Shown here: positions 8,161 through 33,547 of the stretch, piece by piece
Layout: each line of letters begins with the position of its first letter
Position numbering within the stretch: position 1 is the stretch's first letter
Notes under the pieces: generated by a model
What the model was told of the DNA's origin: nothing
The model's input: only the letters and a program-made list of their open reading frames with translations
The model's database searches: none
Program-made: the position numbers and the translations under genes
From: Octopus sinensis
Lineage: Eukaryota
Direction: 5' to 3'
DNA length: 64,000 bases
Assembly (NCBI RefSeq): GCF_006345805.1
Contig: NC_043007.1
Coordinates: forward strand, 60,450,001-60,514,000

Positions 8161-8346
8161 ATTATCACCACTATTCCTACACACAAACTTCCTCATCTTT
8201 GTACATGGGGAACATCATCTGATGCACAATTGGATATGGATGCCATAGATGGAGCGAAATTAGATGCATCGCCGGAGTCAGATGACCATGTTGGTCGGCG
8301 AGGTCAAATACTTTGGGTACGTGGCCTCACAAGACTCCAACAACAG
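8161..8346 (+). CDS. ATP2B/PMCA: PMCA last common exon, N-half of the CaM-binding domain: IITTIPTHKLPHLCTWGTSSDAQLDMDAIDGAKLDASPESDDHVGRRGQILWVRGLTRLQQQ
   Basis: ttatttttag acceptor ends 8160; CAG|gtaaaa donor at 8347; 186 nt, phase 0. RRGQILW.RGL.R.Q is the PMCA CaM site, and the junction is the position of vertebrate splice site C. Confidence 0.97.
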
Positions 8347-9099
8347 GTAAAACATTTTACTTTTTTTTCTTTAATTTGTTCTCTAATATAGAGTTTTAAA
8401 ATATTTAAGTTTAATTTTTATTCTATTTTTGTAAGCTTGTAAATTATTTTAGAGTTAAAAGAAGGAAAAAAAGATATTGCATTGCATGAATTTTCATTGA
8501 GTTTTGCAATGTGAATAAAGTTTGCCTGTTCTTGAAGCTTTTAAACTAATGAGTTTTTCAATTGCTTTTCATACTAAATGAAAAATGTTTATGTAGTTAT
8601 TTTCTCAGATACTGTATTTATGTTAATTATATAGTTATTTTATAAAACAAGGATTAGTCACTTAAACTAAAAAAAAAAATAGTTTAAATATATTTTATTT
8701 TAGTTTAAATATTTACTCTTAACCTAAGAAGGAAAATATATATTTTGATAATTATTTACAATGAATATAATAAATTTCTTTACTCTGTTCTTTAAATTTC
8801 AGAACAATTCCTTCCTAATAGGTGCCCATTCTACATAGTTAGAAATTCCTGCAGATATAAGAGCAGTTATTTGAATTATTTCTCTTCAGTTTTCTGTTTA
8901 ATTAAAATTCATTATGATTAGAATTGGCAATATTTAGTAAACTTCTTGTCGGTTCCTGGCTACAGATACTTTACGATACTGTCTCCTGATTTAATTAAGG
9001 TTTACTATTTTATGTTTCTGTTTCGTTATTTTAACTCAGTTACTTGTACCTTTCAACCTCAGACTCATTTCAAATGGTTAAATTTGTGTTGTAAGCTGT

Positions 9100-9222
9100 T
9101 TTTTTTTTCCTGTTTATTTTTTTTTTCCTTCCAGGTTAACTGAAAATAATTGCTGTTCATATTTTTTTTTTCCTGTTTTATTTTTTTTCCTTCCAGGTTA
9201 ACTGAAAATAATTGCTGTTCAT
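9100..9222. repeat. About 62-bp tandem duplication containing a polypyrimidine-CAG
   Basis: ttttccttccaggttaactgaaaataattgctgttcata occurs twice (CAG at 9132-34 and 9194-96). Confidence 0.85.
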
Positions 9223-10949
9223 AACAGCAATCATGATATTCGAATTTTTTTTTTTTTTATTAAAAAATAAAATATCATTTACTATATTGTACCTAAGTAT
9301 GTGCTTGAAAGCAGGGAAGACAACAGAGGTTTCATTTTCCTTTATTTTCAGTAATTCTTAAATTACATTTTTTAAGTATTTTACTCACATTTCTTTCATT
9401 AATGTGTCAAATTTCTGTTTCCATTCAGCTCCTCTCAGATACTAATTGTCAAAATAGTTATCTTCTAAGAATTTCTTCTGTTAAATACAAATTAATACCA
9501 ATTATTTTCAATAGTATACCAAACTTACTTCAAGTTATTTTAATGTTCATGAATGCATTATTTGATAGAAAACTATGATTCTATGACTTTCATCGTCTCA
9601 TATCTTGCTATCAAATTTTATTTATTGAATTGCTTCATCACATACATATTGCTTTTTGTTGATCTTTTTTTTCTTTCATATTCCTAAATTTCAGTTTACA
9701 GAGCTGAATTCTATTTTCAGTTTGGTTTTGTATTTTTTAGATATTTTTAGTATATTGGATTAAGGACTATAGTAATTAAAACCAAATGAGTAATGATAAT
9801 TATCATTGAGGAAAAGAACTTAAGTAAAACACCAAATTCCTGGTATTTAGATTGAGTTGTTTTTCGCTTATTCTATTGTTAGTCAGGATTTCTATATATC
9901 GTGAGTAATGCTAGGTTTACAAATTCATATGTAAAGTTTGTTTATACTTCTTTATTTATGTCTTATATGTATAGTAAATTGGCTTGCATGATTCAAAATA
10001 TTTCTTTGTAAATATTACTTCAGTTAATATTTTGGCATGCAATAACTTTTTACTCCATACAGCCTACTGAAGACTCGTAAACTTCATTGATAAAAAGTGC
10101 ATTTAAAAAAAGAAGATTATTGTTATAATAGTAATAATATAAGTTTTCTTTATTTTTGGTTTCATCTGGAGGAAGTAGCTATGTCCATGACCTTCACAAA
10201 CCATCTGAGACTGGTGAGATTGATGCAATTAATGCCCCCACCTTTCTGCCACTCTTGAATAGTTGCAGATTAATAGCTGTAAAAAAAACATGTACAAGGA
10301 CAGATTTCCAGAGGGCCAACACTCTGGAGGAAAAGAAACAACCAGTTTACTTCAAGCCAATGAGGAAATAGCAGCCACTCATGTTTCCCTCAAATTCTAC
10401 CTTACTATCTTAAATTAGGAAAGGACACCCTAAACAATGTAGTCCTTGCTATATGCATATATACTCATACACAAACTTGGAGTAAACTGTCTGAAGGTGT
10501 TGTTTCTCCTTGTTTTAATAATGTTTTACATATATGAAACCTTTTTAGTTATACTTGTGATGACAAATGCCACTTTGGCAAAACTGAGTTCTAGAAGTGT
10601 TGTTTTCTGCCCACATGTAACAATAAAATTTTTCACACACCCTATCCTGACAAACCAAACTACATCTCTTCTTTTCCTCACATTTCCTCTTTTCGTGCAC
10701 CATGCCTATGCTTATCTCTAGCTTCCCAATCCTGTCTTCACTACCCTGCTCACAGTATCATCGCTATCCTATTATCCCCCTCTATATACACAGGTTTCAC
10801 CAGTTACTGCATACTCCACTCCCACATACACATACACACACTCTTTGCATTTGTGTGAAGTCTCTAGTCCCTACTCATGCACCTTTGGCAATACCCTACC
10901 ATTTATATTCTGACCTCTGTACCTTAAGGGTATGCCCTGACACTTTGCC

Positions 10950-11603
10950 ACCATCTATCTCTCTCTTGCTCTACGTTACCATTCCATTTATATTCTGATC
11001 CCCATTCCTTGGAATATGCCCTGCCACTCCACCACCATCTCTCTCTTGCACTTTCATTTTATCTATCTATCTATCTCTCTCTCTTGTTCAATCCATTTGA
11101 CTGGGTAACCGTATATCTCCTCTACAGCAGCACACCTGTTTCTGTCTTTATTTTCTCTCTGTCTGACCAGATAACCATGTATCATCTCCGCAGCAAGACA
11201 TCTGTTACTGTCTCTGTCACACACTAACCTTTCATCACCTAGCACAAGATGACCTCCTCCAATGCCCCTCACTTCTATAGGGATCTTTGTCTTGCAAATT
11301 ACTTGCTGACCCTACCATGCTGATACCATGTAAAAAGCATCCAGTCCAAACTGTAAAGTGGTTGACACTTGGAAGGACACTCTGGTGTAAAATCCATGCC
11401 AAAACTGACCTTGCCTGTGATGGTTCCACATAAAAACCAATCAGTCCATTTTGCATGATGATTGATGTTAGGAAGGGTATCCAGCTGTAAAAACTATACC
11501 AAAACAGATACTGAAGCCTAATGCAGTTTTTTGCCTAGCCAGCTCCTGTCAAATCATCCAACACATACCAGCATGGAAAGCAGATGTTAAATGATGATGA
11601 TGA
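10950..11603 (+). mobile_element. Older, long-form (GAT)-tailed SINE copy or copies; 5' boundary approximate
   Basis: Diverged core 'gttaggaagggtatccagctgtaaaaac...ccagcatggaaagcagatgttaaatgatgatgatga'; similar long form at about 34780-35112. Confidence 0.6.
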
Positions 11604-11990
11604 TCATCATCATCATCGTTTAACGTCCGCTTTCCATGCTAGCATGGGTTGGACGGTTCAACTGGGGTCTGGGAAGCCCGAAGGCAGCACCAGGCCAGTC
11701 AGATCTGGCAGAGTTTCTACAGCTGAATGCCCTTCCTAACGCCGACCACTCCGTGAGTGTAGTGGGTACTTTTTATGTGCCACCGACACAGGTGCCAGAC
11801 GAGGCTGGCGAACGGCCACTTTCGGATGGTGTTTTTTTGTGCCACCGACACAGGTGCCGGACGAGGCTGGCGAATGGCCACGCTCGGATGGTGTTTGTTA
11901 CATGCCCACAGCACGGAGGCCAGTCGATGCAGTACTGGCTACAGCCACGTTTGGATGGTTTTCTTATGTGCCACCGGCACTGGTACCACA
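11604..11990 (-). mobile_element. Young (GAT)-tailed SINE, minus strand, abutting the previous copy tail to tail
   Basis: Starts with (ATC)n and is the reverse complement of the 883-1206 core, with several 5' subrepeats. Confidence 0.85.
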
Positions 11991-12290
11991 AAAATACAAA
12001 TTCCATTGATGTTCATCGATTTTGATTTGATTTGATTTTCACTTGCCTCAACAGGTCTTCACAAGTAGAGTTATGTGTCCCAAGGATGAATAATTTCATC
12101 ACAGCCGGAGGCCAGTCGATGCAGTACTGGCTACAGACACGTTTGGATGGGTTTTCTATGTGCCACCGGCACTGGGTACCACAAAAAACAAATTCCATTG
12201 ATGTTCATCGATTTTGATTTGATTTGATTTTCACTTGCCTCAACAGGTCTTCACAAGTAGAGTTATGTGTCCCAAGGATGAATAATTTCA
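11914..12290. repeat. 192-bp-period tandem duplication (2 copies)
   Basis: 11914-12098 is repeated at 12106-12290, differing mainly by small homopolymer-type indels. Confidence 0.9.
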
Positions 12291-12646
12291 ATATGTACTT
12301 CAAATGTTAAACAGTTGATAAATATCACTCCTGAATACTGGCCTGTATTAGGTTTTATTCATAGAAGGGTTTTATCTCCACAACGAAAGCTTACAAAACA
12401 CCTGTCAATTACAGATTGTTTTGGTAATTTTAATGACAAAGAATAATTTTTTTCATGTCCTTTTTGGTGCTAATCAAATCATTTGAGTATTTCTGTGGCT
12501 GCTAAAGAAGAAACATAAGAGTGGAACATACTTCTTTTGTTTTCCAACATTAAATTCAATGAAAATAGTTACATTTCATGAGGTCATCCTACAACGCTCG
12601 TATATGAGTTGACATCTTTTATCTAATACATTATCATCAATGAGTA

Positions 12647-12830
12647 AGGTGGTGAGCTGGCAGAATCGTTAGCTCACCGGATGAAATGCTTAGCAACATT
12701 TTGTCCATCTTCGCATTCTGAGTTCAAATTCCACCAAGGCTGACTTTGCCTTTCATCTTTTCGGGGTTGATAAAATAAGTACCAGTTGAATGCTGGGGTC
12801 GATGTAATTGACTAGTCCCCTCCCACAAAA
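12647..12830 (+). mobile_element. tRNA-derived SINE (second family)
   Basis: gagctggcagaatcgttag...ttctgagttcaaattcc (B-box-like)...ggggtcgatgtaattgact; homologous to 59553-59749. Confidence 0.75.
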
Positions 12831-13049
12831 AACTATAAAAATGTTGAAGCAGATGCCCTGAAGTATTTGTTTTAGCTCATTGCATTCTGAGTTCAAATCC
12901 AGCTATGATCTACCTTTGTGGTAGTTTTAACCAATCATCCAGTTTAACATCTCCACCTGGTATTATGTGTGCTTTTAGTGGAATCAAATTTGTCGCAAGC
13001 ATTCAGACCAGGTTTTTAATTTAACAACACCTTGCTCCTTCTCATCTGT

Positions 13050-13680
13050 CTCAGAAGTCATGTAAAGGGTCATGGACACTACCTTCCCTCTCACTGAAAA
13101 ATCAGAAAGAAAAACAGTATTTTCTCATTAAGGTAGTCACTAGACCATCCCAGAATTGTAATTTAGAAGTTGAAGGGTCATACAGATATAGTTTATTCAC
13201 CAATGTTTCATGAGACATCCACAACCCTGATGTAGATATGTTTTGATTTTAACAACCTGTTGCAGATAAATAGAAGACATTTAAATGATATTCTGGATTA
13301 ACTTTTTTTTTTTTATTATTTGAGTGGAAAACCTTTTCCAGTACAGCTAAAGGAAGACAATGTTTCATACAACTAAAAGGGGGCTTCCTGTGGCTGCCTC
13401 ATCTCTCAAACTATATTTGTCAACCCTTAAACAACTGAAACCAACTTGAACATTTTCTGATATGCTGAATATCTTGGCCATAAACATTTTTGGCAGCACA
13501 ATTTTCTCTTGCTTGAATCCATAAAACATATGCTCCTTATGTTTTTTTTATTTTCTGGTGCTGCCATGTTAAGAAGTGGATTATACAATGCAAACCAACT
13601 ACCTCGGCTACAGCCAATGTTTACGAATGCCATAAGATATTTCCTCTCACATTTACATCTTGAGAATATTTAAGATTAAA
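13050..13680 (-). mobile_element. Highly degraded LINE fragment, possibly a CR1-like RT C-terminus
   Basis: Minus translation YNPLLNMAAPENKKNIRSI... loosely resembles the CR1 RP.LEYA..VW.P..KK.I motif. Weak. Confidence 0.3.
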
Positions 13681-14388
13681 CAGAAGCATATATATTTTTT
13701 ACCTGTCTTCAAATCTTTATTTATAGGATGACTTAATAAATATTTGAGATTTCAGCATTAATTTTATATTTTGAATATTTGTTTTCTTTGTTCTTTCATC
13801 TTTAGATATATTTAAATTTTACCATCTTATAAAAGATCTTTATTTACAGTCTTGCAAAGATGGCAAAATTTAGATATACCAAAATTAATATGGTATTTTA
13901 ATATATATATATATATATATATTATATATAATATATATATATATATATATGTATGTATGATATATGTATGTTTGTATGTATATATATATATATATTGCAA
14001 ACACACAAGTTATACCATGTTGTAATACAGTTATTAAATATTTGCATAAATGTTGAATATTTTATGGTGAGTGCCTTATATACAAAAAGTTTTTATTGAA
14101 AGATTTTACATAAGAATTTAGATAAGATATTTGTATGTATGCATTGTAGAAATTATATATATTATATAAGTATATATACATACACAAGTGTGTGTGCATA
14201 TGTATGTGTATGTATGAATATATATGTATATATGTGTGTATGTATGTATACAAACATACATATTGTAACAACAATAAAAGATATATATATATTGTCATTG
14301 CTATGTGTGTATATATATATATATATATTATATATATAGTTATATAGATATGTGTATATATATATGTATATATATATATATGTTATAG

Positions 14389-14435
<47 letters not shown>

Positions 14436-16268: not shown

Positions 16269-16320
<52 letters not shown>

Positions 16321-17429
16321 ATTCATTCAATTTTACTCATTTTGCAAGTCATTAAATTCCGGCTATAATTACTGAAATGTGTAAAAACCTACTAAGTTAT
16401 CTTAGTTTTCATTGAATGTATTATTTATTGCAAATATATTTCAATTTCTCTTTTACATGTTTTCACAAGATGTTCTGATTTATTCTGGTAATACCAATAC
16501 AAGGCCATCAGTTCATTCAGTTATTTTTAATCTGTTATCTTTACCCCACCCTCTCTCTCTCACCTGATTATTTCTCTCTCCCTCTCTCTTTTTCTCTTCT
16601 CCTCTTCTATATCTCTCCCTTCCTCTTTTTTAATCATTTACAATTTCTGGAACCAAGATATATTATTCAGACCAAGTGTGTTTGATACAGTTCTTAGGTA
16701 CTGGGTTTTGTAGAGAGAAATCCTAAAATTTCATGTTTGTTCATTCTTTTTTCTATGTGGTTACATTTCGCTACATCTCTCCCAATATATTTTCATACTT
16801 TTTTGGCTCCTTGTTTGCCATTTATCATTTGATTTTTTTCATACTGGAAATTGTTGGTAATGTTGCATGACTTAACATTTTATCTTTTGAATGCTTCCTA
16901 TTTTATTGCCAAAATTTGTTGCCCAAATCTATTCTCTGGTCCTTTTAAAAATTTACTCTGACAATATACTTTCACTTAGGGAACTGTTCCTTTGAACTCT
17001 CAACTGAAAATACTGTCTTATGAATTTGAAAGTCTGTTGGCTGATTCCAACCATTTTTTTTTCTTTTTACCCACACAAAGGACATGGTCAATATGTATGA
17101 ATTTAAATTTGCTTCATAAACATATATTCACATGTTTACGTATGTTGTGTAAAGAAAAGTTTTGTTGGAAAAAAAAAAGGCAGAATTTAGGTACGCTATA
17201 AATTTATAGTTTAGATCTTTATAATCAGTTGTTTTCCTCATCTGCTTATGCAATGCCACAATTTCTTGGCATGATTTCAATAATTAAAAAGAGTACATGT
17301 ATGTGTGTGTGTGTGTGTATACACACACACACATATATGTATGTATATGTGTGTGTATGTATATGTGTGTGTATGTATATGTGTGTGTATTTATATGCAT
17401 GTGTATATATGTATGTATATATGTGTGTG

Positions 17430-17467
<38 letters not shown>

Positions 17468-20073
17468 TATATATATATATATACAATTTTCCAAGCAATG
17501 AAGGAAAAGACTTAAAATAAACATCTAAATTATGATCAACAATATATTATAAAAGGAAACATTCTTTTCAATTGTTTTTCCTTAGACCTCTTACAATGCT
17601 GCAATTGTCCCGAAATGTACCTGAAGAAAAGATTAGAGGTGTTGGGAAGAGGGACGTAAATTTAGTTCTAGTTGAAAATATTATGTTGTTATGATTTAGT
17701 TAATAATTCTTCAAGAACTAATTCTTTAAACCGTTGCAGCATCTTTGCAAAATTCAAAACCGGAAATGATTATTTATTTATATGCATCTTGAACTTCGTT
17801 GAACCTAGTCCCAACACCTAGAACTATTCATTCTACTTATGGTTGCAGTGGTGGTGAGCAAATCAAAAGTAGATTTTCATAGCTCCCTTATCTTTCTATT
17901 AAACTAATAGTTACTGTGCCAGTTTTATCTTGCTCCTTTCCACTATGTGTAAGCAGGAAAATCTAATAATGCTACAAAAGGTTTATTTGTTGTTTTTTTT
18001 TCAAATCCTGTAGCTTAGCCAGCTATGTAATTCTTGTCAAAAGATTCTAGTTGAAGTTTTATACTTCAAGAGAAAAGATAACTAACATAAAAGTTAGAAA
18101 GCTGGTAACTAAACATACACTCCTAAGCAAGAAAAAACAAAACAGTGAACCATTTTAGAAAATATTTTTAAGTAAAAGCTTTCTCTGCAAATTGCATTTT
18201 CTAATTAATGATACTCCTTCAAAATAATATTCCATATTTGAAGGTGTGTGTGCATGTTGGTAGGTAAAATAAGTTTGTGAGTGAATTATTTGAATATGAT
18301 AATACCTGATGTGAGGTTGATTTGCTGTTACCTATCAGTGAAGGGAGGATACAGCTGTTTTTTATAAGCTGTTTAATTCGAGAGATAATTCTTACAGTTT
18401 AAAGTGTACAGTGCAGTTAGGCTCATTTAAAATGTACTATCAAGATTGAAAGCAAATTAATGGAAAATAATTATGTATTTCTTTGAAGTTGGATCCATAT
18501 GATCAAGAATATGAGTGAGATTGTGAAAGAGTTAAATATTTCTTAGTTACATTGATATACATTAAATTTGAGGTTAAATTACACAACTCTGACATGTAAT
18601 TTATATTCCAGAAAGTATGCAACTTAAAACTTGTTTTTTAGTTTCAAAACTGAAGAATACAATTTAAATTAACTCGAAGTTCTTTAAAAAAATCTAAATA
18701 TCACATAGTGTTATCTTAAAAACTACATCCCTAATGAAGAATTATAAATGAACTTTAAGTTCCATAAACACTAAGATAGTTCCAATTATTTGTTGCTAAA
18801 TTTTCTTTAAGTTTGGCCCGTACAAAATAAAATAAATTACTAAACATAATTATATACATAGTCAACTTTTAATAATACCAAATGTAAAAATTTGATATTT
18901 TCCCAACTGGTTCATTTTGGCTTTGTATCTTTTCTTTACTGGGAGTGTATGCCTTCCTTTTTACTTAAAATAATAGTTAACATCTAACTGGCATCCCATT
19001 TCTTTCTTTTTTTTATTATTGATTCTAATTTTAACTGAACATTTTGACTCCTTTTGACTTAGTTCTATAATCAGCAAATTTTTCTAGTTTCTGCTATTTT
19101 GTGGATCTGCAGCTTAAGTCACTAGTGGTTCTTATCCAGTTGAAATAGCTTGTCTTGATTTTATACTTGTTGAAATCACCTCCAGATTAGATGAAACATT
19201 AATGAAAACTTGGTGGTTGTTTCTTTTTTTTCTCTCTCTTTTCTTTTTTTTTTGTTTTCATTGGCACAATTTAGGTGGAATTTGCAGTCCACACTACCAT
19301 AGGTAATTAAATTATTTAAGAAAATAGATCTTGTATGTGAAGACACTTTTAAGTATAGTCAGAATAGTTACAACTTTTGTTTGATAGAAGGAAGCTAAAA
19401 TTTCTACAGAATATATTAACTTTGTCTCAAAGGAAAAAGTATTTGGTAGAGCTATTATGAAATTAAAATTTTCCTGTCAGTATGCAATTATAAGATATGA
19501 AATTTATTAAACCTCACTTAAAATTTCAGTAATCTAGGAGAAACAATATGTTTATTACTCAAAATAAGTTTAGAATTAGCCACATATATTTTAAAATAAG
19601 AAATTGAATACCATAGTATTGAAATATTAAAATTAAAATTAGATGCGTTTTGTTTCTTCAATTTACTTGAGCAATTTCTGTGAGTATTACATGTAATTAT
19701 ATGGAATAATAATAATCTAAAATACTTTTTAAATATTTTCAAGTTTAAATGAAGCATTTAAGCAAAAGTATTGATAATGTTAGTTTCTAAACATAGATGA
19801 ATCTTTAGTATTTGTAAGTAGTTTTTATTTATTCCTTTGATAATATTTCAAGAAAACTCATTTTTATTTCTAGTTATCGTTCTGTAATCCTGACCAACTA
19901 TAATATTCCAATTTATTAATGGCTGATTTGAAATGCCATCTGGAAAAAGTTAAGGTCCATCAAAAAATGGATAACTTTGAACAGTCCTCAGTTGTTAAGT
20001 TTTTTACTGCTACTACTACTGCTGTCATTGAGATGTTAACCTAAATAGCTGACTAATTTTCTTCTGTTGACAG

Positions 20074-20469
20074 CTTCGGGTAGTGCGAGCGTTTAAGAGT
20101 ACTTTGGAAGACCTTGAGGAAAAACGTAGCATTCACAGTTTCCACAGTTTACACAGCATACGTAGTTCGCGTAGCCACCCTGGGCCCCGGCCCATAAGTG
20201 AAGAGGCTTATCACCATGACCACCATTTACGATCAAGTCCACCAGAAAACCTGTATCTTAACACCCCAGAAATTGTCTCCACTCCAATAACTCCACTTGA
20301 TCATCAGCCATTCAAGACAAAAAGCCAGTCATTTGAAAATGTTCCACTGGTTGCTAAGCAACCTTCACCCATACTGGCTCCTGTTAACCAAACCCGCAAA
20401 AAGTCTCCAACAAAGACCTTCAGTCAGTCTGACATTGCCAACACAAATATCCATGAGACTTCAATTTAG
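20074..20469 (+). CDS. ATP2B/PMCA: PMCA alternative terminal exon E1 (131 aa): LRVVRAFKSTLEDLEEKRSIHSFHSLHS...IHETSI*
   Basis: Branch-like gactaat at 20051-57, ttcttctgttgacag acceptor, phase 0; completes the CaM site; C-terminal ETSI is a class I PDZ motif. Confidence 0.92.
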   Translation, partial: LRVVRAFKSTLEDLEEKRSIHSFHSLHSIRSSRSHPGPRPISEEAYHHDHHLRSSPPENLYLNTPEIVSTPITPLDHQPFKTKSQSFENVPLVAKQPSPILAPVNQTRKKSPTKTFSQSDIANTNIHETSI

Positions 20470-20712
20470 TAGTTTTTCATTTGTTAACAAAAGAAAAAAG
20501 TGGAAAATCTTTTCTGTGTGAATTTTTTTTTCCCCCCTTAATGGATCCAGTTAGCAGACCATAACTGATGATGGTGTTAATAATGAAGGAAAGACTCTGA
20601 TAATGAGCATCTCTTTGAGGTGATAGAAAGATCTGGTCGCTCCATATTGCCACTGATCCAATCACCTCCCACATATTCCAAATGCTACCAAGTGAAACTT
20701 GTTATATAAAAA

Positions 20713-20722
20713 AATAAATAAA
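20713..20722 (+). promoter_or_regulatory. Candidate polyadenylation signal for E1 (overlapping AATAAA x2)
   Basis: aataaataaa about 245 nt after the E1 stop and upstream of the E2 acceptor. AT-rich background lowers specificity. Confidence 0.4.
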
Positions 20723-21563
20723 AACTGTTGAAGGGACCACAGAAACCAAAGGTCAAACTGGATTTGACTTTTTTGGGGTGTCATCATTTTGATCAAAGGA
20801 TAATAGATTATTCACACAAGCTTCTGGTGCAGTGCACCTTTTTATATTTTCTTTCATAAGTTCCTCTTTTTTTCTTTATCTTTTTTATTATTTTGTTCAA
20901 TTCAATTTTAAATGTATCTTTTTTTTTTATTATTCTTATTATTACTCACAATTTTTCCCCATCAGTGGATGGACTCCTGTGAATAGTGTCTAACTTTTAG
21001 TCTGATATATAACAGTAGAATAACTTATTACTAAACACTTCACTAACCTCTAACATAAACCTACCACTTCACTGCTCTTAATGAAACATTTATCAGCTGT
21101 GTTGTGATAATCCCATGTGAAGGCGGTGTGTTTTTGTCAACAATTTTCTTTCCATGATCCTCTGGTACTCTTCCCTGCATGGTATTTATGTTCATGTTTA
21201 ACCCAAGATTTTATCCTTTTTTTTTTTACCCAGATGATGTTGCTATTATATGTATTTTGTTTTTACTTTTTATTTAATTCACATTTTCCTTGCTCTTGCC
21301 TTTTTTCCTTTCCAGTTTGGAGACCTAAAATTACCATTGCTTAGAATTCAAATTTGCAAATGTGTGTCATATTAGTTCACATAGTCTTGTTTTTAGTACT
21401 GCACTAGTTTATTAGTCCAAATTTTGTTGTTGTGAAACCTTATCCTTTTATTTTAATTATTAGAGAATGCTGCAATGTTGTTTTCCCTTGTGCTTGTATA
21501 TGTTTGAACACCCTACCCTTGTTTTGTTTTGGTTTTGTTTTTGGTTATTTTCCTGTTTTTCAG

Positions 21564-21740
21564 ATTCGTGTTGTTAATGCTTTCCGCATGGCATTAGATG
21601 CGCGTTACGATGGACATAGCCTGTCCTCGAACTATAGTTCCCAATCACTTGAAAACCTTAGGATGAGGTACAAATTTCCAGCCAGCCCACGCATCGACGC
21701 GTCTGCTAGCACCAACCAGACCGTAGACACATCAGTTTGA
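21564..21740 (+). CDS. ATP2B/PMCA: PMCA alternative terminal exon E2 (58 aa): IRVVNAFRMALDARYDGHSLSSNYSSQSLENLRMRYKFPASPRIDASASTNQTVDTSV*
   Basis: tttcctgtttttcag acceptor, phase 0; IRVVNAFR matches the PMCA b-type CaM half; C-terminal DTSV is a class I PDZ motif. Confidence 0.93.
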   Translation: MRVVNAFRMALDARYDGHSLSSNYSSQSLENLRMRYKFPASPRIDASASTNQTVDTSV

Positions 21741-24700
21741 GCATGTACTGCACTATTTTGGACTATGCCCTGCATCATATTATGTGGTAGTATACAAATG
21801 GGCACTGCAAGAGCTGCTGTTGGAAATAATGTGTGACTTACTTACTGTCACAAATCCCTTTTTCATTTTGTATCATTTGCTATTCATCTTATATTGTTTT
21901 GATATCCTTATTCATTTAGAACTTGGGTTCTGAGCTTGCTTTATATTGCTGAAACTGTGCAGTGTAGAAGTACCTTTCCCCTAACATTACTGATCTGGTG
22001 CCAGTTCCTGCTGTGAAAACTAATCTTACTATAGATATGAAAAAAAAAATTTACTGAGTGCAGTATATCTTTGAAACCTACATCCCCACAAAGATAATTT
22101 AGTTGATATTGATATCAAGCCAATATGCATATCTAGTAGGATAAAAAAAAAACATTATTTACATATATACCCCAAAATTTTCAGATTTCTTCCAATCAGT
22201 TGGGCTGAGGCACGTACATTTTCAATATTAGTTTACTCCTTTTTATAATCAAAACCCTTCCCTTTAAGTTTTAAAATGTTTTAAATTATGAATTTTAAGA
22301 TTTAAAAAAAAAATAAACAAAAACCTTGTTCTTATTTGACTGTCATACTTGAAGCTAGAAGCATGTGTGCAGATGTGTTTACAATTGCTGCCATACTTTT
22401 CATTATGTTCGATACAGTATAAAGATTTTCAGTAATTTTTACATCATCTTTATACCGTCTACTTTCATTTTATGTATGTGCAGGAACTGTGTGTATGTGT
22501 GTGCAATTGCTCATACAAAACACCGACTGCTTTGTTCATTTTATATTTTTCTTTAACCGAAGGCTAATTGTCTCAAATGTGTGGTTGAAATTAAAAATTA
22601 ACCTTTAAAACGTTGAAAAATGGAGAAAAGTTTTTACACAAATTTTTTCCTCTCTGAGTGGAAAATTTACGAAAAAATAAAATTATGGAAAATAACAAAA
22701 AAAAAATTTTTTTAACTTCGAGTTTTATGTACAAAATGATCTTTAAAATGAAATAAATGGAACTAGAAATGATTAATTGATTTTAGAAGAAACATTTTTG
22801 TAATTATTCAAATGTAAATTTTGAAAATCTCTATTTAAAAAACGCAAAAAAAAAAGGTACAGAAACAAAACCATTTTGTAGTGGGATATGTTATGGACAC
22901 CATCATTGGGTGTTTCAATTATTGGAATGGATTAATCTTACACAACTAGTGGGCGTCTTGAAGTATGACTGCAGGTATTGGCTGTGCTGTTAGATACTGA
23001 GCAGGTTTCCTGTGTTTCTAGTGTGATGATAAATATTTACTAACACCAAACACACAGTTTGATTCACATTTTACAAAATTTCCTTTCAGAAAATTAATAA
23101 ATGCAAAAAAAAAAACTTAAAATGAATTGTATTAATTCCTTTAAAATAAAATAATAGTTTCATTATCTTAAATCAACAGATAATTATAAAGTAAATAACT
23201 TTTTAAAATATTATTAAAAACGACTTTAAAATAGCTTACTCTGCAAGAACTTTTAATCTTGCAGTTATTAGTTTCCATGTACTGGCAGTTTTTAGAGCAT
23301 ATCAATATTAACTGACTGCTATGATTTTATTGTCACGGGGAAAAAATTCAAATCTTTGGTATGCTCTCATTCTTATCTCAGATCAGTTCTTTTTTTTTTA
23401 ATTTTATTATTATTAACAGTAGGATGCCAGCTAGCTCTCTGGATGTATGTTTACTTGAGCTTACATGTTCTAGCTGCACTTTATCCTATCTCTCTATCAC
23501 CATACACAAAGTCATTGACTTAAAAACTTCTGTATCAACAATGAGGCAAATAATGGCAGAAAAAGGTGAGATGACTAGGTCATCTGCAGTTCTTAAAGAT
23601 TGATTGGTAATTTAACTGTAGGTTTTGTACCAACAACTGTTTTGTTCTCAGCATTGTTTATCGTTTTTATGAATAAAAACGTTTGACCTGTAGTATTTTG
23701 TTATTGTTTGTAGTTGTTTAAATAACAGCTTTTATTTATTTTTCATTTTTTTCCTTTTCTAATCCTGAATTACTAATTACTATTACTTTCATGTTGCATT
23801 TATGCAATTTATTAACACCAGTGTTCAGTAATTTACTCATAAAATAGTAAATACAAACACCCTGAAATAAAAACCACATTGATGCTAAACTTAGAGACTT
23901 AATCTGGCTGCGTATATTTCTGGAAAAAAAAATTGAAAGCCCATACAATAACAACAGGGCTTTGTGAAAATTCACTCAGTTGTCTTATTGATTAAACACC
24001 ATTTTACTTCTCCTCATTCATATTCTCCCAGTTATAACACAAGTTGCCAGCTGTAACTGTCCAGATTCATCTTGATAAGAATATGTGGGCAGGTTATAGC
24101 CAATATATTTACTGTTGAAATTTACTAAACTGTTCAATAAATGTTGTTATGGGAAGTATGCACGTGTTTGTGTACGTATTTGTGTGATTTTATTGAAACA
24201 ATTTGATTTTCCTTTATTTACTTGAATTCATTATTAAAATTCCTTTGATTAGATATGGAAACCAGAAACAAAGTGTTTGTTTCTGAAAGCCACACTAATA
24301 ATTAAAATTTTAGTGGGACTGATTTGATATCACTGATGTGAAACATTGCTTTGAACTCAGTAATTCTGTAAATAAAGGTTCTACTGAAAGTCTGCAGCAA
24401 AACTCTACTGAACAATCAGTGGTTGCCAGTGTGATTACTGATATCAACATAGATTTAGACTACACATACACACAGATACACACACATTTTTGTCTAAAGC
24501 TTGGTAATCACAGAGAAACTCTTTTATGTGTAGCTGTTGTTCCCTAAATTAAAAGATAATTTTCTGGTGGAACCACTTTTGAAGTTTTAACTCCCAAAGC
24601 ACACACACAAAGCTAATAAACAAGAGCAGGTAAGTATTGAGTTGGAAAACCCATTTGGAAAGAATAAATCGAAGGCTGTCCTTTGACTTTTTCTATTCAA

Positions 24701-27700
24701 AACAATTTTTCAATTCAATATCTACGTGCTATTGTTTAAAGCTTTACATGTATGCTTCGAGCAATACTATTCCAAAAAGAACTATTTCATATTCTCTTAA
24801 AAGTTCAAAATTAGTTGGGGTAATATTTGCCATTTTATAATGAATTATTTCTTTGTTTTCGGTGTATTTTCACATACATTATTTCTTAAAAGTTACCAAA
24901 TTTTAGATACAACTAAACTAATTTAGTTCTAAGTAACTTGTAAGCTCTTAGAATTATACTCATGCATATATGTGCACATTCTAAAACTTTACAAAAGGAT
25001 CTGGAATAAAAATTGAGATATTTTTGTTTATTATTTTGTGAGAAAATAAATAAATAGCAATGAGGTAGAAAACTACTTAATTTTCTTTTGTTTTGTTTTT
25101 TGTGTTTTTTTAAATTTTATTAACACCAAGATTAATAAGCATTGCACTATTCCCTGGGTTTTGTATTCAAATTTCTGGGTGGACAGGTTTTGTCTAAAGC
25201 TGCTAAATATTTACAGTGATACAAATAGTTTTCTGTTTTTTTAAATCATTTCAAACCTTGAGCCCTAATGACAATCTTTCATTCAAACCCTATTTTCAAA
25301 AACTCTTTCAAATTTTCAACCATCTTAAAAATTAGATTTGATTTTATTGTATACAACTATTTGTGAAATTATTGCTATTATTTCAAAATATTTATTTTCT
25401 CCACAAAATAGTCTTTAGAATTTGACAGAACTCCTCACTGACAAAATTGTCTCAATAAAATAGCAATTTATTATATCCACCATACTTGGAAGTATATTTT
25501 AAAAATGTATATTTGAAGATAAAATAACAAAAAAAAAATCATTGAGAATTGTTCTGTGTAAGAGGAAGTGTTAAAAAAAGTGAATTTTATATACACATTA
25601 CTGCTTCATTTACTTCATGCATCATGGATTTCATCGAGCTCTGGATATGAACCAGGAATACATTGGAGTTAAAGAAATCTGCCAAAATCTCTTACAACAT
25701 GTTTTTCCCAAGAACTAAGGTGACATTTGCAACCAGAGAGAATTCCGCGGCAAACATTGGAAGCATTGTGGAGCCAGTTCTGTCGTAATGGTGAAACTTT
25801 CCTTGTCCAAACAACATGACTCTACTTACCCACCTACTTACCTATGTAGCATGATTGTATCCTTCTTCTGCCTTTTTTTATTTTTTTTTATTTTTTCTTC
25901 TCTTTTTTCTAACTTGTCTTTAACCCTCCTCTGTGCTCTTTGATGAGCAGATTCAACCTCTCTCGCTGCTTTCTTCCATTCAGATCAACATTATTCTATC
26001 CAACGTGTCAACAAATGAGCACTTGCAGGCTTACATCTGCTGCTTTTCATTGTTGGCAAGAAATTCTCTCAGTCCTAAGCACCAAATTGTTTACTATGCA
26101 CATCTATCTCATCCTGTCTGCCATTTATCCTAACATCCCAAACATCAGTGTTGTATTTAAAATTGTGTTCAAATTTTCAATATGTATTCATTTCTATTCT
26201 CTAAATAATTTTAAAGCTTTATTTTCTTTGTTGTCAAACTAAAATTCAATAATACAGTTAGGTTAAGAGTTTTTAATATTCAGTGCCCTGACTTTTCTGC
26301 AAATCCTTCATTTGCAAATGTTTATATTCTCAGAATTCTCATTCCTTCTTGTAGAAGACTTTGGAACAGTTGCATTTCATGCAAAATAATTGTTTTTAAT
26401 ATTTGCCCCTGCAAGTTCTTTACTCAAAACGAAATTTTAAAATCTGATATTTAAATATGTTTTGCAAAAAAGCTATATATATTTCCTACACCCATCTCCT
26501 TTTAGTACTCTCTCCAGTTATTGACTCACTTTTACTTTTCTCTTTTACAATTCACTCTGCTTTGTTAAAAATCAAATTCTTATTTTCTATTACTTTCTTG
26601 TTTTCTATTCTACCAAGATTAGATTTTTATGGTAATAATGTAAAATTATATTTATTAAACCAATAATTGTTTCTCTTTTTAATTAGAAAATAAAATTGAT
26701 ACTTTTGTTTTGAACAGCTTTAGGGATTATAATGTCTTTTATGATTAATATCAATTTGAAGAACCCAAATTATTGATTCCTTGGTGAAATCAATACATTC
26801 CCAATCTTTATTCAAATTTTAAATTATTCCAAAAAACTGTTCTCAGTTCTCATCACAAATATATTGACATTTTGGATTTCTAATTTAGATGAATTTATGT
26901 GTGGTTTTATCAATAACCATTTCTCTTTTATCATTTTAGGTTTCTAAATTGGTCTTCATTATCTGCAGATGTAACAAAAAATATTTTAATCTTCTTGCTT
27001 TGAACTGTCTTCATAGATGCTAACTACAATTTAAAATTTTTATCTGCTAGTTCTAGCTTTTGCATATCTTTTTGCACATCAGACAACTTCATCACAATAG
27101 GTTAGATGATGGCACTTAATCAAGCTTCCTTCAGCTTCTTGATACTGATCTTCAATATCAGTTATCATTTCCTTATATACAAACATATGCACATACACAC
27201 ACACACACATATTTGCAGTGATACAAAAAATTTCATATAAAAACAGTTTCCACATTAAGAGCAAAATCTAATCAACTTAATAAACAATATTATGGTATCT
27301 AAACTTATTGCATGTTGCTACAGTTTCTTCGGTGCTGAGACGAAATCTTGATTCTAAACTTGATTTTAAGACTTAAGAATGACTTCCAAAAAATTCTCTC
27401 TACTTCAATCTATATCTTTACAATTAACGTCAGTTTTCATATTTTATTTTTCCAATGCTTGAGACTTCATATTCTATTAAGTTAAACATTTCTATCTCAT
27501 CTTTTGGAATGAAATTTCTTAAAGGCAAGAAAATCATCTTACCTGCCTGCTATTTATTATTGAACACATTTCACTCACTATATGCTAATCTAATTCCTAT
27601 GGTTTATCATTTTCATTATAGTTTAATGGAAATTCTTTGGGCTTCTTTTTTTTTTTTTTGTTTTTTTTTTTTCTTTTACAATCTGGGGTTACTTCCACTG

Positions 27701-29362
27701 TCAAATTATCTTGCTTGAATTGTTTAACAATGTCTGCCTAAAATTCTTCACTTAAGAAATTTTAATTCTTTCTTGTAATTTATATTTTTCTTTTCACTTT
27801 CTCTCTAGCTTCCCATCCAATTTCTAATATTTTTGATTTTTGGTACAAAAATTGTTTACATCTCTAATATAGATTTAGATAACTGTAAGTTAATGAATTT
27901 TATTGCAAGATTCATCTTTATAACAGATTTTTTCTTGCCTAAATGTAAGATATTTGAAACATTAATTAGATCAAGCAAACATTGTACTGAGCAAAGACTT
28001 CTCTCAAAAATGCAAATACATTAGTTATAAATTATAATGTAGAAAATACATCAAAACATTTGACACTAACTTACAAATTTGTAAGTCTTAGATGAAAGTG
28101 TGCTTGCTAATGTTGACCTCTGAACTAAAATAATCAGCAGTGTGCCCGGGAAAAAATATCTTTCAAATGACTAATCCCAGTCTTTGTAAATAATTTGAAA
28201 TGAAGTATGTTACCATAAACAACAGAAGCCATTTGTAATGATTGCTTCTTCATCTTGACACTGCATGATTGTTGCAAATGAGTGCCACCATTATACAAGT
28301 AGTGTCATTTGTTTCCAATCTTCAATGAGAACCAGTCAAAGAGAAACGAGTTATGGCTGGCAACAAGAAGGGCATCCAGCTGTAGAAAATCTGCCTAAGC
28401 CATGCAAGTATGGAAAAGTGAATGTTAAAATGATGATGATGATCTACCATTCAGTTGCAAAACTCAGCTCAAGTTATATATTGTCCAGTATTGCTATTTG
28501 AAGGTATACCAATAATCCTATGAATTATGGTGTATCATTCTATGTACACTCTTGTATAACATAATGTAACAAACTGAAGTGAGATTGAATAAAATATATG
28601 TGTGATATGAATTTTATTTAACTATCTCTTTGCTTTTATTTTATTATTAAATTTGATACAAAATATAATAGCTTAATTCATTAACCATTTCATTATCATA
28701 TTTCTATTGAAATACACTGTCTTTATTTCAATAAATTTTGAAAATAATAAAGAATTTAATAAAATATCTTTTTCGTTATTAAGCTGGTGTTTGAAACATA
28801 AATTAAATTGAAATTTTGATGAACTTTAATTTAGATCACTTTACAACTTTAGAACACTTTAAAAAAATTATACAAAGTGAAAGTTTATATCATAGAACCA
28901 GGGACAGTTTCAGGCAAGCTGGTATCAAAAAAAGGTTTGAAGCAGGTTTATGTATTAAAAATATATTTATAAACATCAGGTATTTTGGCAAGATACAACC
29001 AACTAGTTTTTCTCTTTCACTCTATGGGCTTTTGTACAGCCCATCAGTGCCTTGCCAGAGAGTGCATAGCTCTACAAATACACTGCAGCTAAGGTAAATC
29101 TTCATAAAATATTATATAACAAAGTAACCAACTTGCACAGTACATTAAAATATATTTACATAAAGTTTTAATGCTTGCTTATGCTGTGGATGAATAAATG
29201 GAATCCTAACTTGAAATGTTCCATCAAATAATGTAAAGTAGCTGTCAACTGATTATCTTGCTACAAACTCTGCATTATATATTTCTTTTAATCAAGTCAC
29301 CAAATATTTAATAGGTAAAAATATCCATCAAATTCAGATGTATATTAATCAGAACTGAGGTG

Positions 29363-29364
<2 letters not shown>

Positions 29365-29445
<81 letters not shown>
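29365..29445. repeat. (TC)n microsatellite, about 40 units
   Basis: Uninterrupted tctc run. Confidence 0.95.
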
Positions 29446-29450
<5 letters not shown>

Positions 29451-30768
29451 CTAAAAACTTAGATTCTTCCAACAATCTAGATCACTAGTCAGAAAAAGTT
29501 CTCTAAAATATATCCCTTACTTTTTAAAAATAGCTTTGACAACATATCATTATTACCATAGGGGTAGAGGAGTTGCTACAAACAAGAAACATCTAAACTA
29601 GGTGCTTTACCATTATTCAGGTGTTTTTTTTTATTTATTTTTTTTTAACTTGTGGGTTTTTTAGTTCATGAGCTCTACCGAGAGATCAGCTTTACCTTCT
29701 TTGACTCCACAATTTGGTAATAATTATCATGTGCTGTGTTGAATTCCATTAACTATTGCTCTTTCTTTCCAATTTGAGACATCATGCCAAAGTAAGAAAA
29801 CATTATTATTCTTCTGTGGAGGTTGATTCAACAAACTGGTTGCAGTCTACAGCTAAAGCTACTTCTTCATCATATGCCACTTGCTGCCTTAGTATATAGA
29901 CATATTCCTATTTCTCTCCCTATAAAATCTATAAGTGTTATCATTTTAAGAAAGAAAATTTATATGAGATGAATTCTCAAACCAATTTCAAAGTCAATTC
30001 TAGCAACTTTTGTTAGGTTGCTAATCTGAGGATTAAATTGTAATTATAAAATCATTATTATTGTTATTATTGAGTACAACAAGAAATGACTTCTCAGGAA
30101 CTTGATTCCACATAAAAACCACTTCAATTCCACATAAAATCTATATCAGTTGTAACCTTCAAAACAAAGCTTCAACACCACACTTTAGTATATCTTCTCT
30201 CCTTTTTAATACTAGGATGTCATGCCTAACCATCATCATCATCATCATCATCATATATTTATACTTATCTGTCCAAGGTTACTTAATGTCCCTTGTAGTT
30301 AACCAATACAATAGAGGTAAGCTCCTCGTGAGCCACGTCTACAACATTTTTGATGCCCTATCAATGCCATTTCACTTTACATTGCCTTTGAAAAAAGAGG
30401 TATTGTATGTCACACAAACTCATTACCCCTCTTCCATAAATGTAGGGCCTTGTGCCAACATAAACCACCAATTATTGTGATAACTTAGGATCTATAAAGT
30501 GTGATGAGCAATTCTCCTTCAGCAGTGCTGGCGTCAAAGACTTTTGTGAGCCAGAAATATCAGTTCATTGCATGGGCCAGCTTCTTGCCTAGCATTTGCA
30601 CGTTGCATGCATGTATATTCTTTATATTGTTGTTTTGTTGTTTTTTTCTTTTCTTAATCACAATAATTTTACTTTATCGCTTGTTATGTGTGTATATATA
30701 TATATGTGTGTATATATATATATGTGTGTATATATATATATATGTGTATATATATATATGTGTGTATG

Positions 30769-30799
<31 letters not shown>

Positions 30800-31088
30800 C
30801 TATATGTTATTTTATTTAAAACAAAAAATATAAAGCAATTTTATCAGTATTACTGTCGGTTTTATCCTTTGTTTTGTTTTAATTCTTTTTATTTGACTTT
30901 TTCTTTTTTTTTTTCCTTTCTTGGCAAGTATATATATATACATATATATATATTTAGATTGTTAAATTTTTTTTTTTGTGTCTTTATGCCATGTGATTTT
31001 TTAAAAATATTTATTTTCTACATTGAAATAATATTTTTTTAGAATGTGTTCAATACATGTGTGTATGTGTGTGTGTATAGATATATTG

Positions 31089-31155
<67 letters not shown>

Positions 31156-31210
31156 GTATATATAAAATTTCCTGTTATTATTTTTATTGTTATTATTCTT
31201 TTGTTTTCAG

Positions 31211-31426
31211 ATTCGTGTTGTAAACGCTTTTCAAATGGATTTAGATTCTCACTTGGACAGCTATGACAAACGCAGTCGGCCCTCTGTTGCCAGCTTGCCA
31301 TCTCTTCAATTACGCTCTGGACCATTAAAAAAAAATAATCTTCCAAGTTCTCCTGAAACGGATGAATGTCCAAGTAAACCATGGCTAAACCGTGCCGAAA
31401 GTATCCCATATGCTGACGAACCTTAA
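31211..31426 (+). CDS. ATP2B/PMCA: PMCA alternative terminal exon E3 (71 aa): IRVVNAFQMDLDSHLDSYDKRSRPSVASLPSLQLRSGPLKKNNLPSSPETDECPSKPWLNRAESIPYADEP*
   Basis: ttcttttgttttcag acceptor, phase 0; IRVVNAF start homologous to E2; no PDZ-type end. Confidence 0.9.
   Translation: MRVVNAFQMDLDSHLDSYDKRSRPSVASLPSLQLRSGPLKKNNLPSSPETDECPSKPWLNRAESIPYADEP

Positions 31427-33504: not shown

Positions 33505-33547
<43 letters not shown>

What the first reader, a model, noticed from the sequence alone, without database searches (positions are those of the whole stretch)
8161..31426. Three-way array of alternative terminal exons swaps the PMCA regulatory tail at the CaM site
The last common exon ends ...GLTRLQQQ (phase 0). 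Three separate AG-preceded, phase-0, stop-terminated exons continue it: LRVVRAFK (20074), IRVVNAFR (21564) and IRVVNAFQ (31211). Vertebrate PMCAs diversify this site C mainly by a cassette exon with internal donors, whereas here whole last exons appear to be exchanged, giving three different tails from one pump. This is the strongest host-biology signal in the window.
Basis: partly seen in the sequence, partly recalled or inferred. Interest (0 to 1): 0.75.

Follow-up and report, generated by a model that had tools for sequence, protein, structure and literature searches.

The report
Three alternative tail exons, calcium pump
The window holds the 3' end of a mollusc plasma-membrane calcium pump (PMCA) gene whose last shared exon can be continued by any of three conserved, stop-terminated exons, giving three regulatory tails; it is real and old, but it is an ordinary kind of alternative splicing at a site already known to be spliced in other animals.

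Summary
The last shared exon, 8161-8346, ends ...GRRGQILWVRGLTRLQQQ|gt in phase 0. Exactly three ag-preceded, phase-0 reading frames restart with xRVVxAFx:
- A, 20074-20469, 131 aa, ends ETSI.
- B, 21564-21740, 58 aa, ends DTSV.
- C, 31211-31426, 71 aa, ends YADEP.

All three are under purifying selection against related genomes (dN/dS 0.05, 0.19 and 0.02), with stop codons kept. The same A-B-C array, in the same order, occurs in the bivalve Tegillarca granosa and in an unnamed contig whose tail C most resembles that of the gastropod Nucella, so it appears to predate the split of these mollusc lineages.

B has a near-perfectly conserved AATAAA/GT-rich poly(A) block 1.9 kb past its stop. A has an AATAAA at a conserved offset (+244 here, +242 in a relative). 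This supports separate terminal exons rather than the vertebrate frame-shifting cassette.

The junction falls after residue 18 of the 28-residue calmodulin-binding peptide, which is vertebrate "site C". cDNA-like contigs from other taxa join the shared exon to A-type and B-type tails. No C-type junction was found, and there is no RNA evidence for this species.

Tail diversity from single invertebrate PMCA genes is already recorded for Drosophila and C. elegans. This is a new member of a known kind, of moderate interest.

The parts
1751..1964 (+). PMCA exon ([27 protein letters not shown]...LLFGG; ends in phase 1, donor gtaagt)
   Evidence: tblastn with PMCA fragments; splice contexts read
3554..3771 (+). 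PMCA exon (AEILDIDSGR...[32 protein letters not shown]...GTLISQ)
5750..5857 (+). PMCA exon ([36 protein letters not shown]; last transmembrane segment)
8161..8346 (+). Last shared exon. It ends with the first 18 residues of the calmodulin-binding domain (RRGQILWVRGLTRLQQQ). Phase-0 donor CAG|gtaaaa.
   Evidence: aligned to the PMCA4b C28 peptide 2KNE and to PMCA1/PMCA2 structures
19944..20073 (+). Conserved intronic block directly upstream of exon A. It is 72-86% identical to relatives, against 19-33% further upstream. It contains the CTGAC branch-point candidate and is a probable splicing-regulatory region.
20074..20469 (+). Alternative terminal exon A, coding part: 131 aa plus TAG. Resembles the vertebrate b tail (LRVVRAFKSTLEDLEEKRSIHSFHS...), with class I PDZ-ligand-like end ETSI.
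   Evidence: (dN/dS 0.05-0.06)
20713..20722 (+). AATAAATAAA, candidate poly(A) signal of exon A, 244 nt after the stop. A relative (L014) has its only AATAAA of the first 660 nt at +242. Tegillarca has one at +172.
21564..21740 (+). Alternative terminal exon B, coding part: 58 aa plus TGA. IRVVNAFRMALDARYDGHSLSS..., with class I PDZ-ligand-like end DTSV.
   Evidence: (dN/dS 0.19)
21741..23700 (+). Inferred 3' UTR of exon B, with conserved blocks at 21741-22013, 22197-22422, 22699-22826 and 23570-23718.
23590..23720 (+). Near-perfectly conserved block of about 120 nt, with AATAAA at 23672 followed by a GT-rich stretch. Conservation stops right after it. This is the poly(A) site of exon B.
31211..31426 (+). 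Alternative terminal exon C, coding part: 71 aa plus TAA. IRVVNAFQMDLDSHLDSYDKRSRPSVASL...ESIPYADEP, with no PDZ-ligand end.
   Evidence: (dN/dS 0.02)
32176..32181 (+). AATAAA 750 nt after the stop of C. Only a candidate poly(A) signal, because its surroundings are not conserved.

Best explanation
The window carries the 3' end of a mollusc plasma-membrane Ca2+-ATPase (PMCA, P2B-type) gene. After four constitutive exons, the last of which (8161-8346) encodes the first 18 residues of the calmodulin-binding domain, the transcript can be completed by one of three alternative last exons. Each has its own 3' splice site in phase 0. Each supplies its own copy of the second half of the calmodulin-binding domain (x-R-V-V-x-A-F-x, which keeps the Phe that aligns with the second calmodulin anchor of vertebrate PMCA4b). 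Each also has its own tail and stop codon, and at least A and B have their own poly(A) site. The choice is probably made by competition between splicing of the 8346 donor to the acceptors at 20074, 21564 or 31211 and cleavage/polyadenylation at the proximal sites (about 20.73 kb for A, about 23.69 kb for B). The products differ in three ways. (i) Net charge of the second half of the calmodulin site: A, LRVVRAFK, +3; B, IRVVNAFR, +2; C, IRVVNAFQMD, 0. (ii) The downstream regulatory tail: A is long and resembles the vertebrate b tail. (iii) The C-terminus: A (ETSI) and B (DTSV) end in a class I PDZ-ligand motif, while C ends in the invariant ...SIPYADE(P) with none. By analogy with vertebrate a/b variants, this should set calmodulin affinity, basal autoinhibition and scaffold-dependent localisation. 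Shown here: the exon anatomy, coding constraint, the poly(A) blocks, conservation of the array across molluscs, and the position of the junction in the calmodulin site. Inferred: actual use of each junction in this animal, mutual exclusivity, tissue specificity and functional consequences.
For: Exon anatomy is read directly. Pfam PF12424 (PMCA C-terminal domain) spans the junction in all three virtual isoforms with equal scores of 59-60 bits against a cutoff of 22.9. The junction aligns after residue 18 of the C28 peptide of PMCA4b (2KNE) and at QTQ|I/M in PMCA1 (6A69) and PMCA2 (9GSD). Purifying selection against relatives: A, pN 0.015-0.021 and pS 0.25-0.27; B, 0.037 and 0.17; C, 0.024 and 0.57-0.59. 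There are no frame shifts and the stops are kept. The A-type tail is found in dozens of mollusc and arthropod sequences ending (H)ETS[IM]. The C-type tail is found in 25 mollusc sequences with 30 invariant columns in the 19 that were aligned. The same A-B-C order, each exon ag-preceded, is found in Tegillarca granosa (L019: 617, 1993, 10459), in L018 (partial A, 780, 10037) and in L014/L015. A tblastx search shows no other convincing collinear conserved coding block. B's poly(A) block is conserved, and A's AATAAA lies at +244/+242/+172. cDNA-like contigs join the shared exon to B-type tails (L016, L017, P0044, P0089) and to A-type tails (P0020, P0027, P0033-35, P0038, P0040, P0054, P0075). L016 carries about 980 nt of 3' UTR after a B-type stop, and its three-frame translation shows no C-type exon.
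Against: There is no transcript evidence for this species. No contig was found that joins the shared exon to a mollusc C-type exon. C's poly(A) site is not identified. A's poly(A) support is one positional coincidence, roughly a 2-3% chance. The functional consequences rest on analogy with vertebrate a/b variants (PMC8835232).
Confidence: 0.8

Rival explanations
1. A and B are not separate terminal exons. They are two alternative 3' splice sites of one composite terminal exon that ends at the conserved poly(A) site near 23.69 kb, so A-form mRNAs carry exon B inside their 3' UTR. C is the only truly separate last exon.
For: Only 1.09 kb separates A's stop from B's acceptor. A moderately conserved block (20959-21191, 67%) lies between them. 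The only strongly conserved poly(A) block in the region is the one after B. In L018 the gap between A and B is only about 440 nt.
Against: AATAAA lies at nearly the same offset after A's stop in the window (+244) and in L014 (+242), inside otherwise unalignable sequence, and at +172 in Tegillarca. This points to a proximal poly(A) site for A.
Confidence: 0.13
2. The exons are stop-containing cassette exons, closer to the vertebrate mechanism. A or B can be spliced onward to downstream exons, and all isoforms share a distal 3' end beyond C. The tail would then be set by which exon is included first.
For: Downstream of C, two relatives align with each other for more than 4.5 kb, and a 45-nt element at about 36150-36200 is shared with the window. 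This is compatible with a long distal 3' UTR.
Against: Conserved poly(A) signals follow A and B. Conservation right after B's stop looks like 3' UTR over 273 nt, not like a short donor. A stop codon far upstream of later junctions would normally trigger nonsense-mediated decay (established knowledge). The B-type cDNA-like contig L016 runs about 980 nt past its stop with no C-type sequence visible.
Confidence: 0.05
3. Only one tail exon is used in this animal, and the other two are decaying relics of exon duplication.
For: No RNA evidence for this species was available.
Against: For all three exons dN/dS is 0.02-0.19, with intact frames and conserved stops across relatives whose introns no longer align. 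All three exons persist in order in distant mollusc lineages.
Confidence: 0.02

Closest known systems
Vertebrate PMCA (ATP2B1-4) splice site C, a/b variants
   Same: [quoted passage not shown] The alternative exons each re-supply an xxVVxAFx half-site. One form has a PDZ-ligand end (b: ETSL/ETSV; here A: ETSI and B: DTSV) and one lacks it (a; here C). Tail A aligns with the PMCA2 b tail beyond the calmodulin site (STLEDLEEKRSIHSF ~ SSLYEGLEKPESRTSIHNF, whole match E = 5.9e-12). Tail C shares AFQ and RSRPSVAS ~ RRQPSIAS with the PMCA1 a-type insert.
   Different: Vertebrates insert a cassette exon (exon 21, 154 nt in PMCA1) upstream of the b exon and change the reading frame. Here there are three phase-0, stop-terminated exons with their own poly(A) signals. 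The b-like exon comes first and the a-like exon last. There are three tail types from one gene instead of two main types from each of four genes.
Drosophila PMCA and C. elegans mca-3 C-terminal isoforms (tandem duplicated exon substitution events)
   Same: A single invertebrate PMCA gene gives several C-terminal isoforms, most with a PDZ-binding end: six of seven in Drosophila (PMC11904214). [quoted passage not shown] Sequences that share the GQILWIRGLTRLQTQ form of the common exon with a named spider protein (P0035) carry both A-type (LRVIRAFKSTLEDLEERRS) and B-type (IRVVNAFRSGVD...TETAL) tails.
   Different: Among named hits, the C-type tail (AFQMD...SRPSVISLQSLQ...ESIPYADE) was found only in molluscs. 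The exact exon layout of the fly and worm genes was not examined here.
Alternative last exons (splicing-coupled alternative polyadenylation) in general
   Same: One shared donor and several downstream acceptors, each followed by its own stop and poly(A) signal.
   Different: Here the alternative exons are paralogues of one another at their 5' ends. B and C share 75.6% nucleotide identity across the acceptor and the first codons in a cross-species match. They replace half of a defined protein-binding site.

Membership tests
PMCA (P2B Ca2+-ATPase) C-terminal regulatory domain | Match to Pfam PF12424 (ATP_Ca_trans_C) above the gathering score, next to the last transmembrane exons | tested here: met
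   59.2, 59.8 and 60.3 bits against a cutoff of 22.9 for shared exon + A, + B and + C. Upstream exons match PMCA transmembrane segments.
PMCA splice site C (as defined in vertebrates) | Alternative splicing falls inside the calmodulin-binding domain, after residue 18 of the 28-residue peptide | tested here: met
   The exon boundary at 8346 aligns to ...NRIQTQ|I of 2KNE, 9GSD and 6A69.
PMCA splice site C (as defined in vertebrates) | Mechanism is inclusion of a cassette exon that shifts the reading frame of the last exon | tested here: not met
   Each alternative exon starts in phase 0 and carries its own stop. Conserved poly(A) signals follow A and B. The vertebrate mechanism is taken from PMC8835232. 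RNA confirmation is not available.
PMCA splice site C (as defined in vertebrates) | One variant class keeps a C-terminal PDZ ligand and another loses it | tested here: met
   A ends ETSI, B ends DTSV, C ends YADEP. All eight B-type tails aligned end in [ST]-x-[VILF]. Most A-type tails end ETS[IM].
Alternative last exons | Each alternative exon has its own 3' splice site, stop codon and poly(A) site | tested here: inconclusive
   Splice sites and stops are present for all three. The poly(A) site is strong for B, moderate for A and not identified for C.
Alternative last exons | The junctions are actually used, in a mutually exclusive way, in mRNA | not testable with these tools
   No transcriptome of this species is available. 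cDNA-like contigs of other taxa show A-type and B-type junctions only.
Tandem duplicated exon substitution (mutually exclusive homologous exons) | Neighbouring alternative exons are homologous to each other | tested here: met
   The three start with xRVVxAFx. The B region of L014 (7810-7887) matches the C region of the window (31168-31245) at 75.6%. Homology is limited to the first 10 or so codons.
Tandem duplicated exon substitution (mutually exclusive homologous exons) | The substituted exons have the same length and frame and are internal | tested here: not met
   They are 131, 58 and 71 codons long, and each is terminal with its own stop.

The most novel reading that the evidence does not exclude
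The a/b duality of PMCA splice site C may not be a vertebrate invention, nor convergent as PMC9741552 suggests for this gene family. It may instead be inherited from the bilaterian ancestor. On this reading, mollusc tail A (AFK-STLEDLEEKRSIHSF...ETSI) is the orthologue of the vertebrate b tail, and mollusc tail C (AFQ...RSRPSVAS, no PDZ ligand) is the orthologue of the vertebrate a insert (AFQ...RRQPSIAS). Related AFQ...[KR]GR[PM]S[FL]ASL tails occur in cDNA-like contigs of an unidentified source. Molluscs would then preserve a three-state version of a regulatory switch more than 500 million years old.
Probability: 0.3. Interest if true: 0.55.

Novelty: new member of a known kind. Interest (0 to 1): 0.4.

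Why it matters
PMCA tails set calmodulin sensitivity, basal activity and PDZ-scaffold targeting, so the choice of tail tunes local Ca2+ clearance in neurons, muscle and calcifying epithelia.

The finding gives three things:
- A clean, testable isoform set for mollusc Ca2+ physiology, including shell formation and neuronal signalling.
- A correction for genome annotation. The A-type and C-type exons are currently filed as orphan genes: "hypothetical" or "uncharacterized" proteins in Tegillarca granosa, Nucella lapillus, Mya arenaria, Elysia crispata, Babylonia areolata and Littorina saxatilis.
- Material to decide whether site-C splicing is ancestral or convergent among animals.

Tried and rejected
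- **Tail-C profile against PDB.** A profile of 19 tail-C sequences found no PMCA at E <= 10. Homology of C to the vertebrate a insert therefore rests only on short motifs (shuffle p = 0.0085).
- **Exhaustive search with tail C.** The search of 1.84 billion representatives returned only short genomic ORFs and two repetitive giants. No full-length PMCA with a C tail was found.
- **Degenerate junction scan.** A scan of JGI contigs for GLTRLQxQ|IRVVNAFQMD found nothing. A relaxed pattern found two cDNA-like contigs with a different AFQ-type tail from an unidentified source.
- **RNA fold.** The conserved intron block plus exon A (19944-20472) gave z = 0.25, so there is no unusual structure. Structure does not explain the low synonymous divergence.
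- **Poly(A) site of C.** The AATAAA at +750 coincides with L011, but the surrounding sequence does not align.
- **Species identification.** A literature search for the SRA/ENA accessions of the nearest relatives found nothing, and cluster look-up gave no names. "Cephalopod" remains unverified.
- **Further tail exons.** None was found by motif scan or by tblastx against the two distant relatives L018 and L019.
- **Literature.** Searches for mollusc, cephalopod or invertebrate site C found no dedicated description.
Full report
**1. Observation**

- Exon 8161-8346 is preceded by ag, is 186 nt long in phase 0, and encodes IITTIPTHKLPHLCTWG...GRRGQILWVRGLTRLQQQ, followed by gtaaaa.
- A polypyrimidine tract and ag at 20074 are followed by 131 codons, LRVVRAFKSTLEDLEEKRS...NIHETSI, and TAG TAG.
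- At 21564 there are 58 codons, IRVVNAFRMALDARYDGHSL...TVDTSV, and TGA.
- At 31211 there are 71 codons, IRVVNAFQMDLDSHLDSYDKRSRPSVASL...ESIPYADEP, and TAA.

A six-frame scan for the motif [ILMV][RKDE][VI]V[NKRQ][AS]F finds only these three sites in 64 kb. All are on the + strand and each lies immediately after an ag.

**2. What the gene is**

PMCA fragments from other animals align to four upstream exons. Their boundaries, read from the splice contexts, are 1751-1964, 3554-3771, 5750-5857 and 8161-8346. They encode the last transmembrane segments and the start of the C-terminal tail.

Each of the three virtual products (shared exon plus A, B or C) matches Pfam PF12424, the PMCA C-terminal domain, across the junction. 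The scores are nearly equal at 59-60 bits, against a cutoff of 22.9.

Against solved structures, RRGQILWVRGLTRLQQQ|LRVVRAFKS aligns residue for residue with the calmodulin-binding peptide C28 of PMCA4b (2KNE, RRGQILWFRGLNRIQTQ|IKVVKAFHS) and with PMCA1 (6A69) and PMCA2 (9GSD). [quoted passage not shown]

**3. Are all three exons real?**

Yes. Five related genomic sources were recovered:
- L012/L013, about 99% identical in the exons.
- L001-L010.
- L014 and L015, two parts of one ENA contig.
- L011.

Introns of the more distant relatives no longer align with the window, but the three exons do. Codon-wise comparison gives the figures below, with no frame shifts and identical stop positions.

| Exon | pN | pS | dN/dS |
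|---|---|---|---|
| A | 0.015-0.021 | 0.25-0.27 | 0.05-0.06 |
| B | 0.037 | 0.17 | 0.19 |
| C | 0.024 | 0.57-0.59 | 0.02 |

Protein searches add to this:
- The A-type tail occurs in dozens of mollusc and arthropod sequences, most ending (H)ETS[IM].
- The C-type tail occurs in 25 mollusc sequences, with named hits from Nucella, Tegillarca, Mya and Elysia. The 19 that were aligned show 30 invariant columns, including SRPS, SSPE and the terminal SIPYAD.
- B-type tails occur in close relatives and in several more distant sequences, all ending in [ST]-x-[VILF].

**4. The array is old**

In the bivalve Tegillarca granosa (L019, GCA_029721355.1) the same three exons lie in the same order, each after an ag:
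- A at 617, ending ITETSI.
- B at 1993, ending TETQF.
- C at 10459, ending ESIPYADE.

L018 is an unnamed ENA contig whose tail C most resembles that of the gastropod Nucella. It has the end of A at 1-345, B at 780 and C at 10037. L014/L015 have A, B and then C about 31 kb further on.

In a tblastx search of the window against L018 and L019, the only convincing collinear conserved blocks were A, B and C. The output was cut and full of microsatellite matches. There is therefore no sign of a fourth tail exon. The three-exon arrangement appears to predate the divergence of these mollusc lineages.

**5. Terminal exons or cassettes?**

About 1.93 kb after B's stop lies a block of roughly 120 nt that is almost identical between the window and L014. 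It contains AATAAA at 23672 followed by a GT-rich stretch, and conservation ends abruptly after it. This is the signature of a cleavage/polyadenylation site. Conserved blocks fill the interval between stop and site, as expected of a 3' UTR.

After A's stop, the window has AATAAA at +244. L014 has its only AATAAA of the first 660 nt at +242, although the sequence between does not align. Tegillarca has one at +172. At 2.3 such hexamers per kb, this coincidence has roughly a 2-3% chance.

For C no conserved site was found.

Two JGI cDNA-like contigs (L016, L017) join the last transmembrane exons and the shared exon directly to a B-type tail. They continue for about 980 and 530 nt of untranslated sequence. 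The three-frame translation of L016 shows no C-type exon. Other contigs join the shared exon to A-type tails.

These data favour three separate last exons. No RNA evidence for this species was available, and no contig was found that joins a mollusc C-type exon to the shared exon.

**6. Likely mechanism and consequences (inference)**

The shared donor at 8346 must pair with one of three acceptors. Use of B or C requires that the proximal poly(A) site or sites be bypassed. Use of A is probably regulated through the 130-nt intronic block directly upstream of it. That block is 72-86% identical to relatives, against 19-33% further upstream.

All three tails keep V-V-x-A-F, including the Phe that aligns with the second calmodulin anchor of PMCA4b. 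The net charge of the half-site falls from A (LRVVRAFK, +3) through B (IRVVNAFR, +2) to C (IRVVNAFQMD, 0). A and B end in class I PDZ-ligand motifs, and C does not.

In vertebrates the a variants, whose half-site is MDVVNAFQ, have an altered calmodulin-binding site and lack the PDZ motif found in all b variants (PMC8835232). By analogy, the three mollusc tails should give graded calmodulin control and different scaffold targeting.

**7. Relation to what is known**

- Vertebrate site C uses a cassette exon upstream of the b exon and a frame shift. Here there are phase-0 terminal exons, and the b-like exon comes first. The mechanism differs while the site and the logic are shared.
- The single Drosophila PMCA gene has seven isoforms, six with a PDZ-binding end (PMC11904214).
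- The PMCA family is listed among genes with tandem-duplicated exon substitution in vertebrates, arthropods and nematodes, interpreted there as convergence (PMC9741552).
- I found no paper that describes the mollusc arrangement.
- Annotations currently file the A-type and C-type exons as orphan hypothetical genes in several molluscs. In Tegillarca the PMCA gene model ends before exon C, which is annotated as a separate gene.

**8. A less ordinary reading**

Tail A aligns with the vertebrate b tail beyond the calmodulin site (shuffle p = 0.04). Tail C shares AFQ and RSRPSVAS ~ RRQPSIAS with the a-type insert of human PMCA1 (p = 0.0085). It also shares a similar motif with AFQ-type tails in two cDNA-like contigs of an unidentified source (p = 0.0005 to 0.0045).

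This hints that a-like and b-like tails are ancestral rather than convergent. However, a tail-C-only profile does not retrieve PMCA1, and the exon order is reversed relative to vertebrates. I give this reading about 0.3.

**9. Verdict**

What remains open is RNA confirmation, C's poly(A) site and the species identity. It is a genuine, ancient, well-conserved alternative-last-exon array at PMCA site C, and a new member of a known kind. Interest is moderate at 0.4.

Noticed in passing
window 20074-20469 and 21564-21740, compared with 31211-31426: Synonymous divergence from the same relatives is much lower in exons A (pS 0.25-0.27) and B (0.17) than in exon C (0.57-0.59). Fisher p = 3.6e-4 and 1.4e-4. 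This suggests extra nucleotide-level constraint on A and B, for example splicing enhancers. An RNA fold of 19944-20472 showed no unusual structure (z = 0.25).
   Followed up: partly
window about 36150-36200: A 45-nt element, TATGCACATTTTGATATTCAGATGGTGCTCTTT, lies 4.7 kb downstream of exon C. It is conserved in L011 (about 2800) and L015 (about 13750) inside otherwise diverged sequence. It could be a distal 3' UTR element or something unrelated.
   Followed up: partly
window 49842-50261 (-) and 55112-55465 (+): Two mariner-type transposase remnants (Pfam PF01359 Transposase_1, E = 3e-7 and 9e-9), with HQDNARPHTA...PHPPYSP(D/N)LAPSDYHLF motifs.
   Followed up: yes
window about 1042 (-), 11636-12025 (+), 56662-57141 (-): Three copies of a repeat family with an open frame containing FLQL(D/N)ALPNA(N/D)HSVSVVG(A/T)FYVPP. 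There is no Pfam match. It is probably an uncharacterised interspersed repeat, and one copy sits in the long intron between the shared exon and exon A.
   Followed up: partly
L020 (81-122 +) and L021 (139-180 -), JGI contigs: cDNA-like PMCA contigs of an unidentified organism, in which ...GLTRLQHQ is joined to IRVVNAFQ(D/E)P...[KR]GR[MP]S[LF]ASL.SV. L020 ends in GETSV. This is an AFQ-type tail whose serine-rich motif resembles mollusc tail C.
   Followed up: partly
L019 (Tegillarca granosa CM056599.1) 1-4088 and 10001-10677; named hits: Public annotations split this locus. The PMCA gene model ends before exon C, and exon C (and elsewhere exon A) is filed as a separate hypothetical or uncharacterised protein in Tegillarca, Nucella, Mya, Elysia, Babylonia and Littorina.
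   Followed up: partly
window 18-624, 30500-31150, 33340-33710, 43600-44135: Long (TA)n, (TG)n and (CA)n-type microsatellite tracts create spurious long ORFs rich in Y, I, C and V. One of them abuts the acceptor region of exon C.
   Followed up: no
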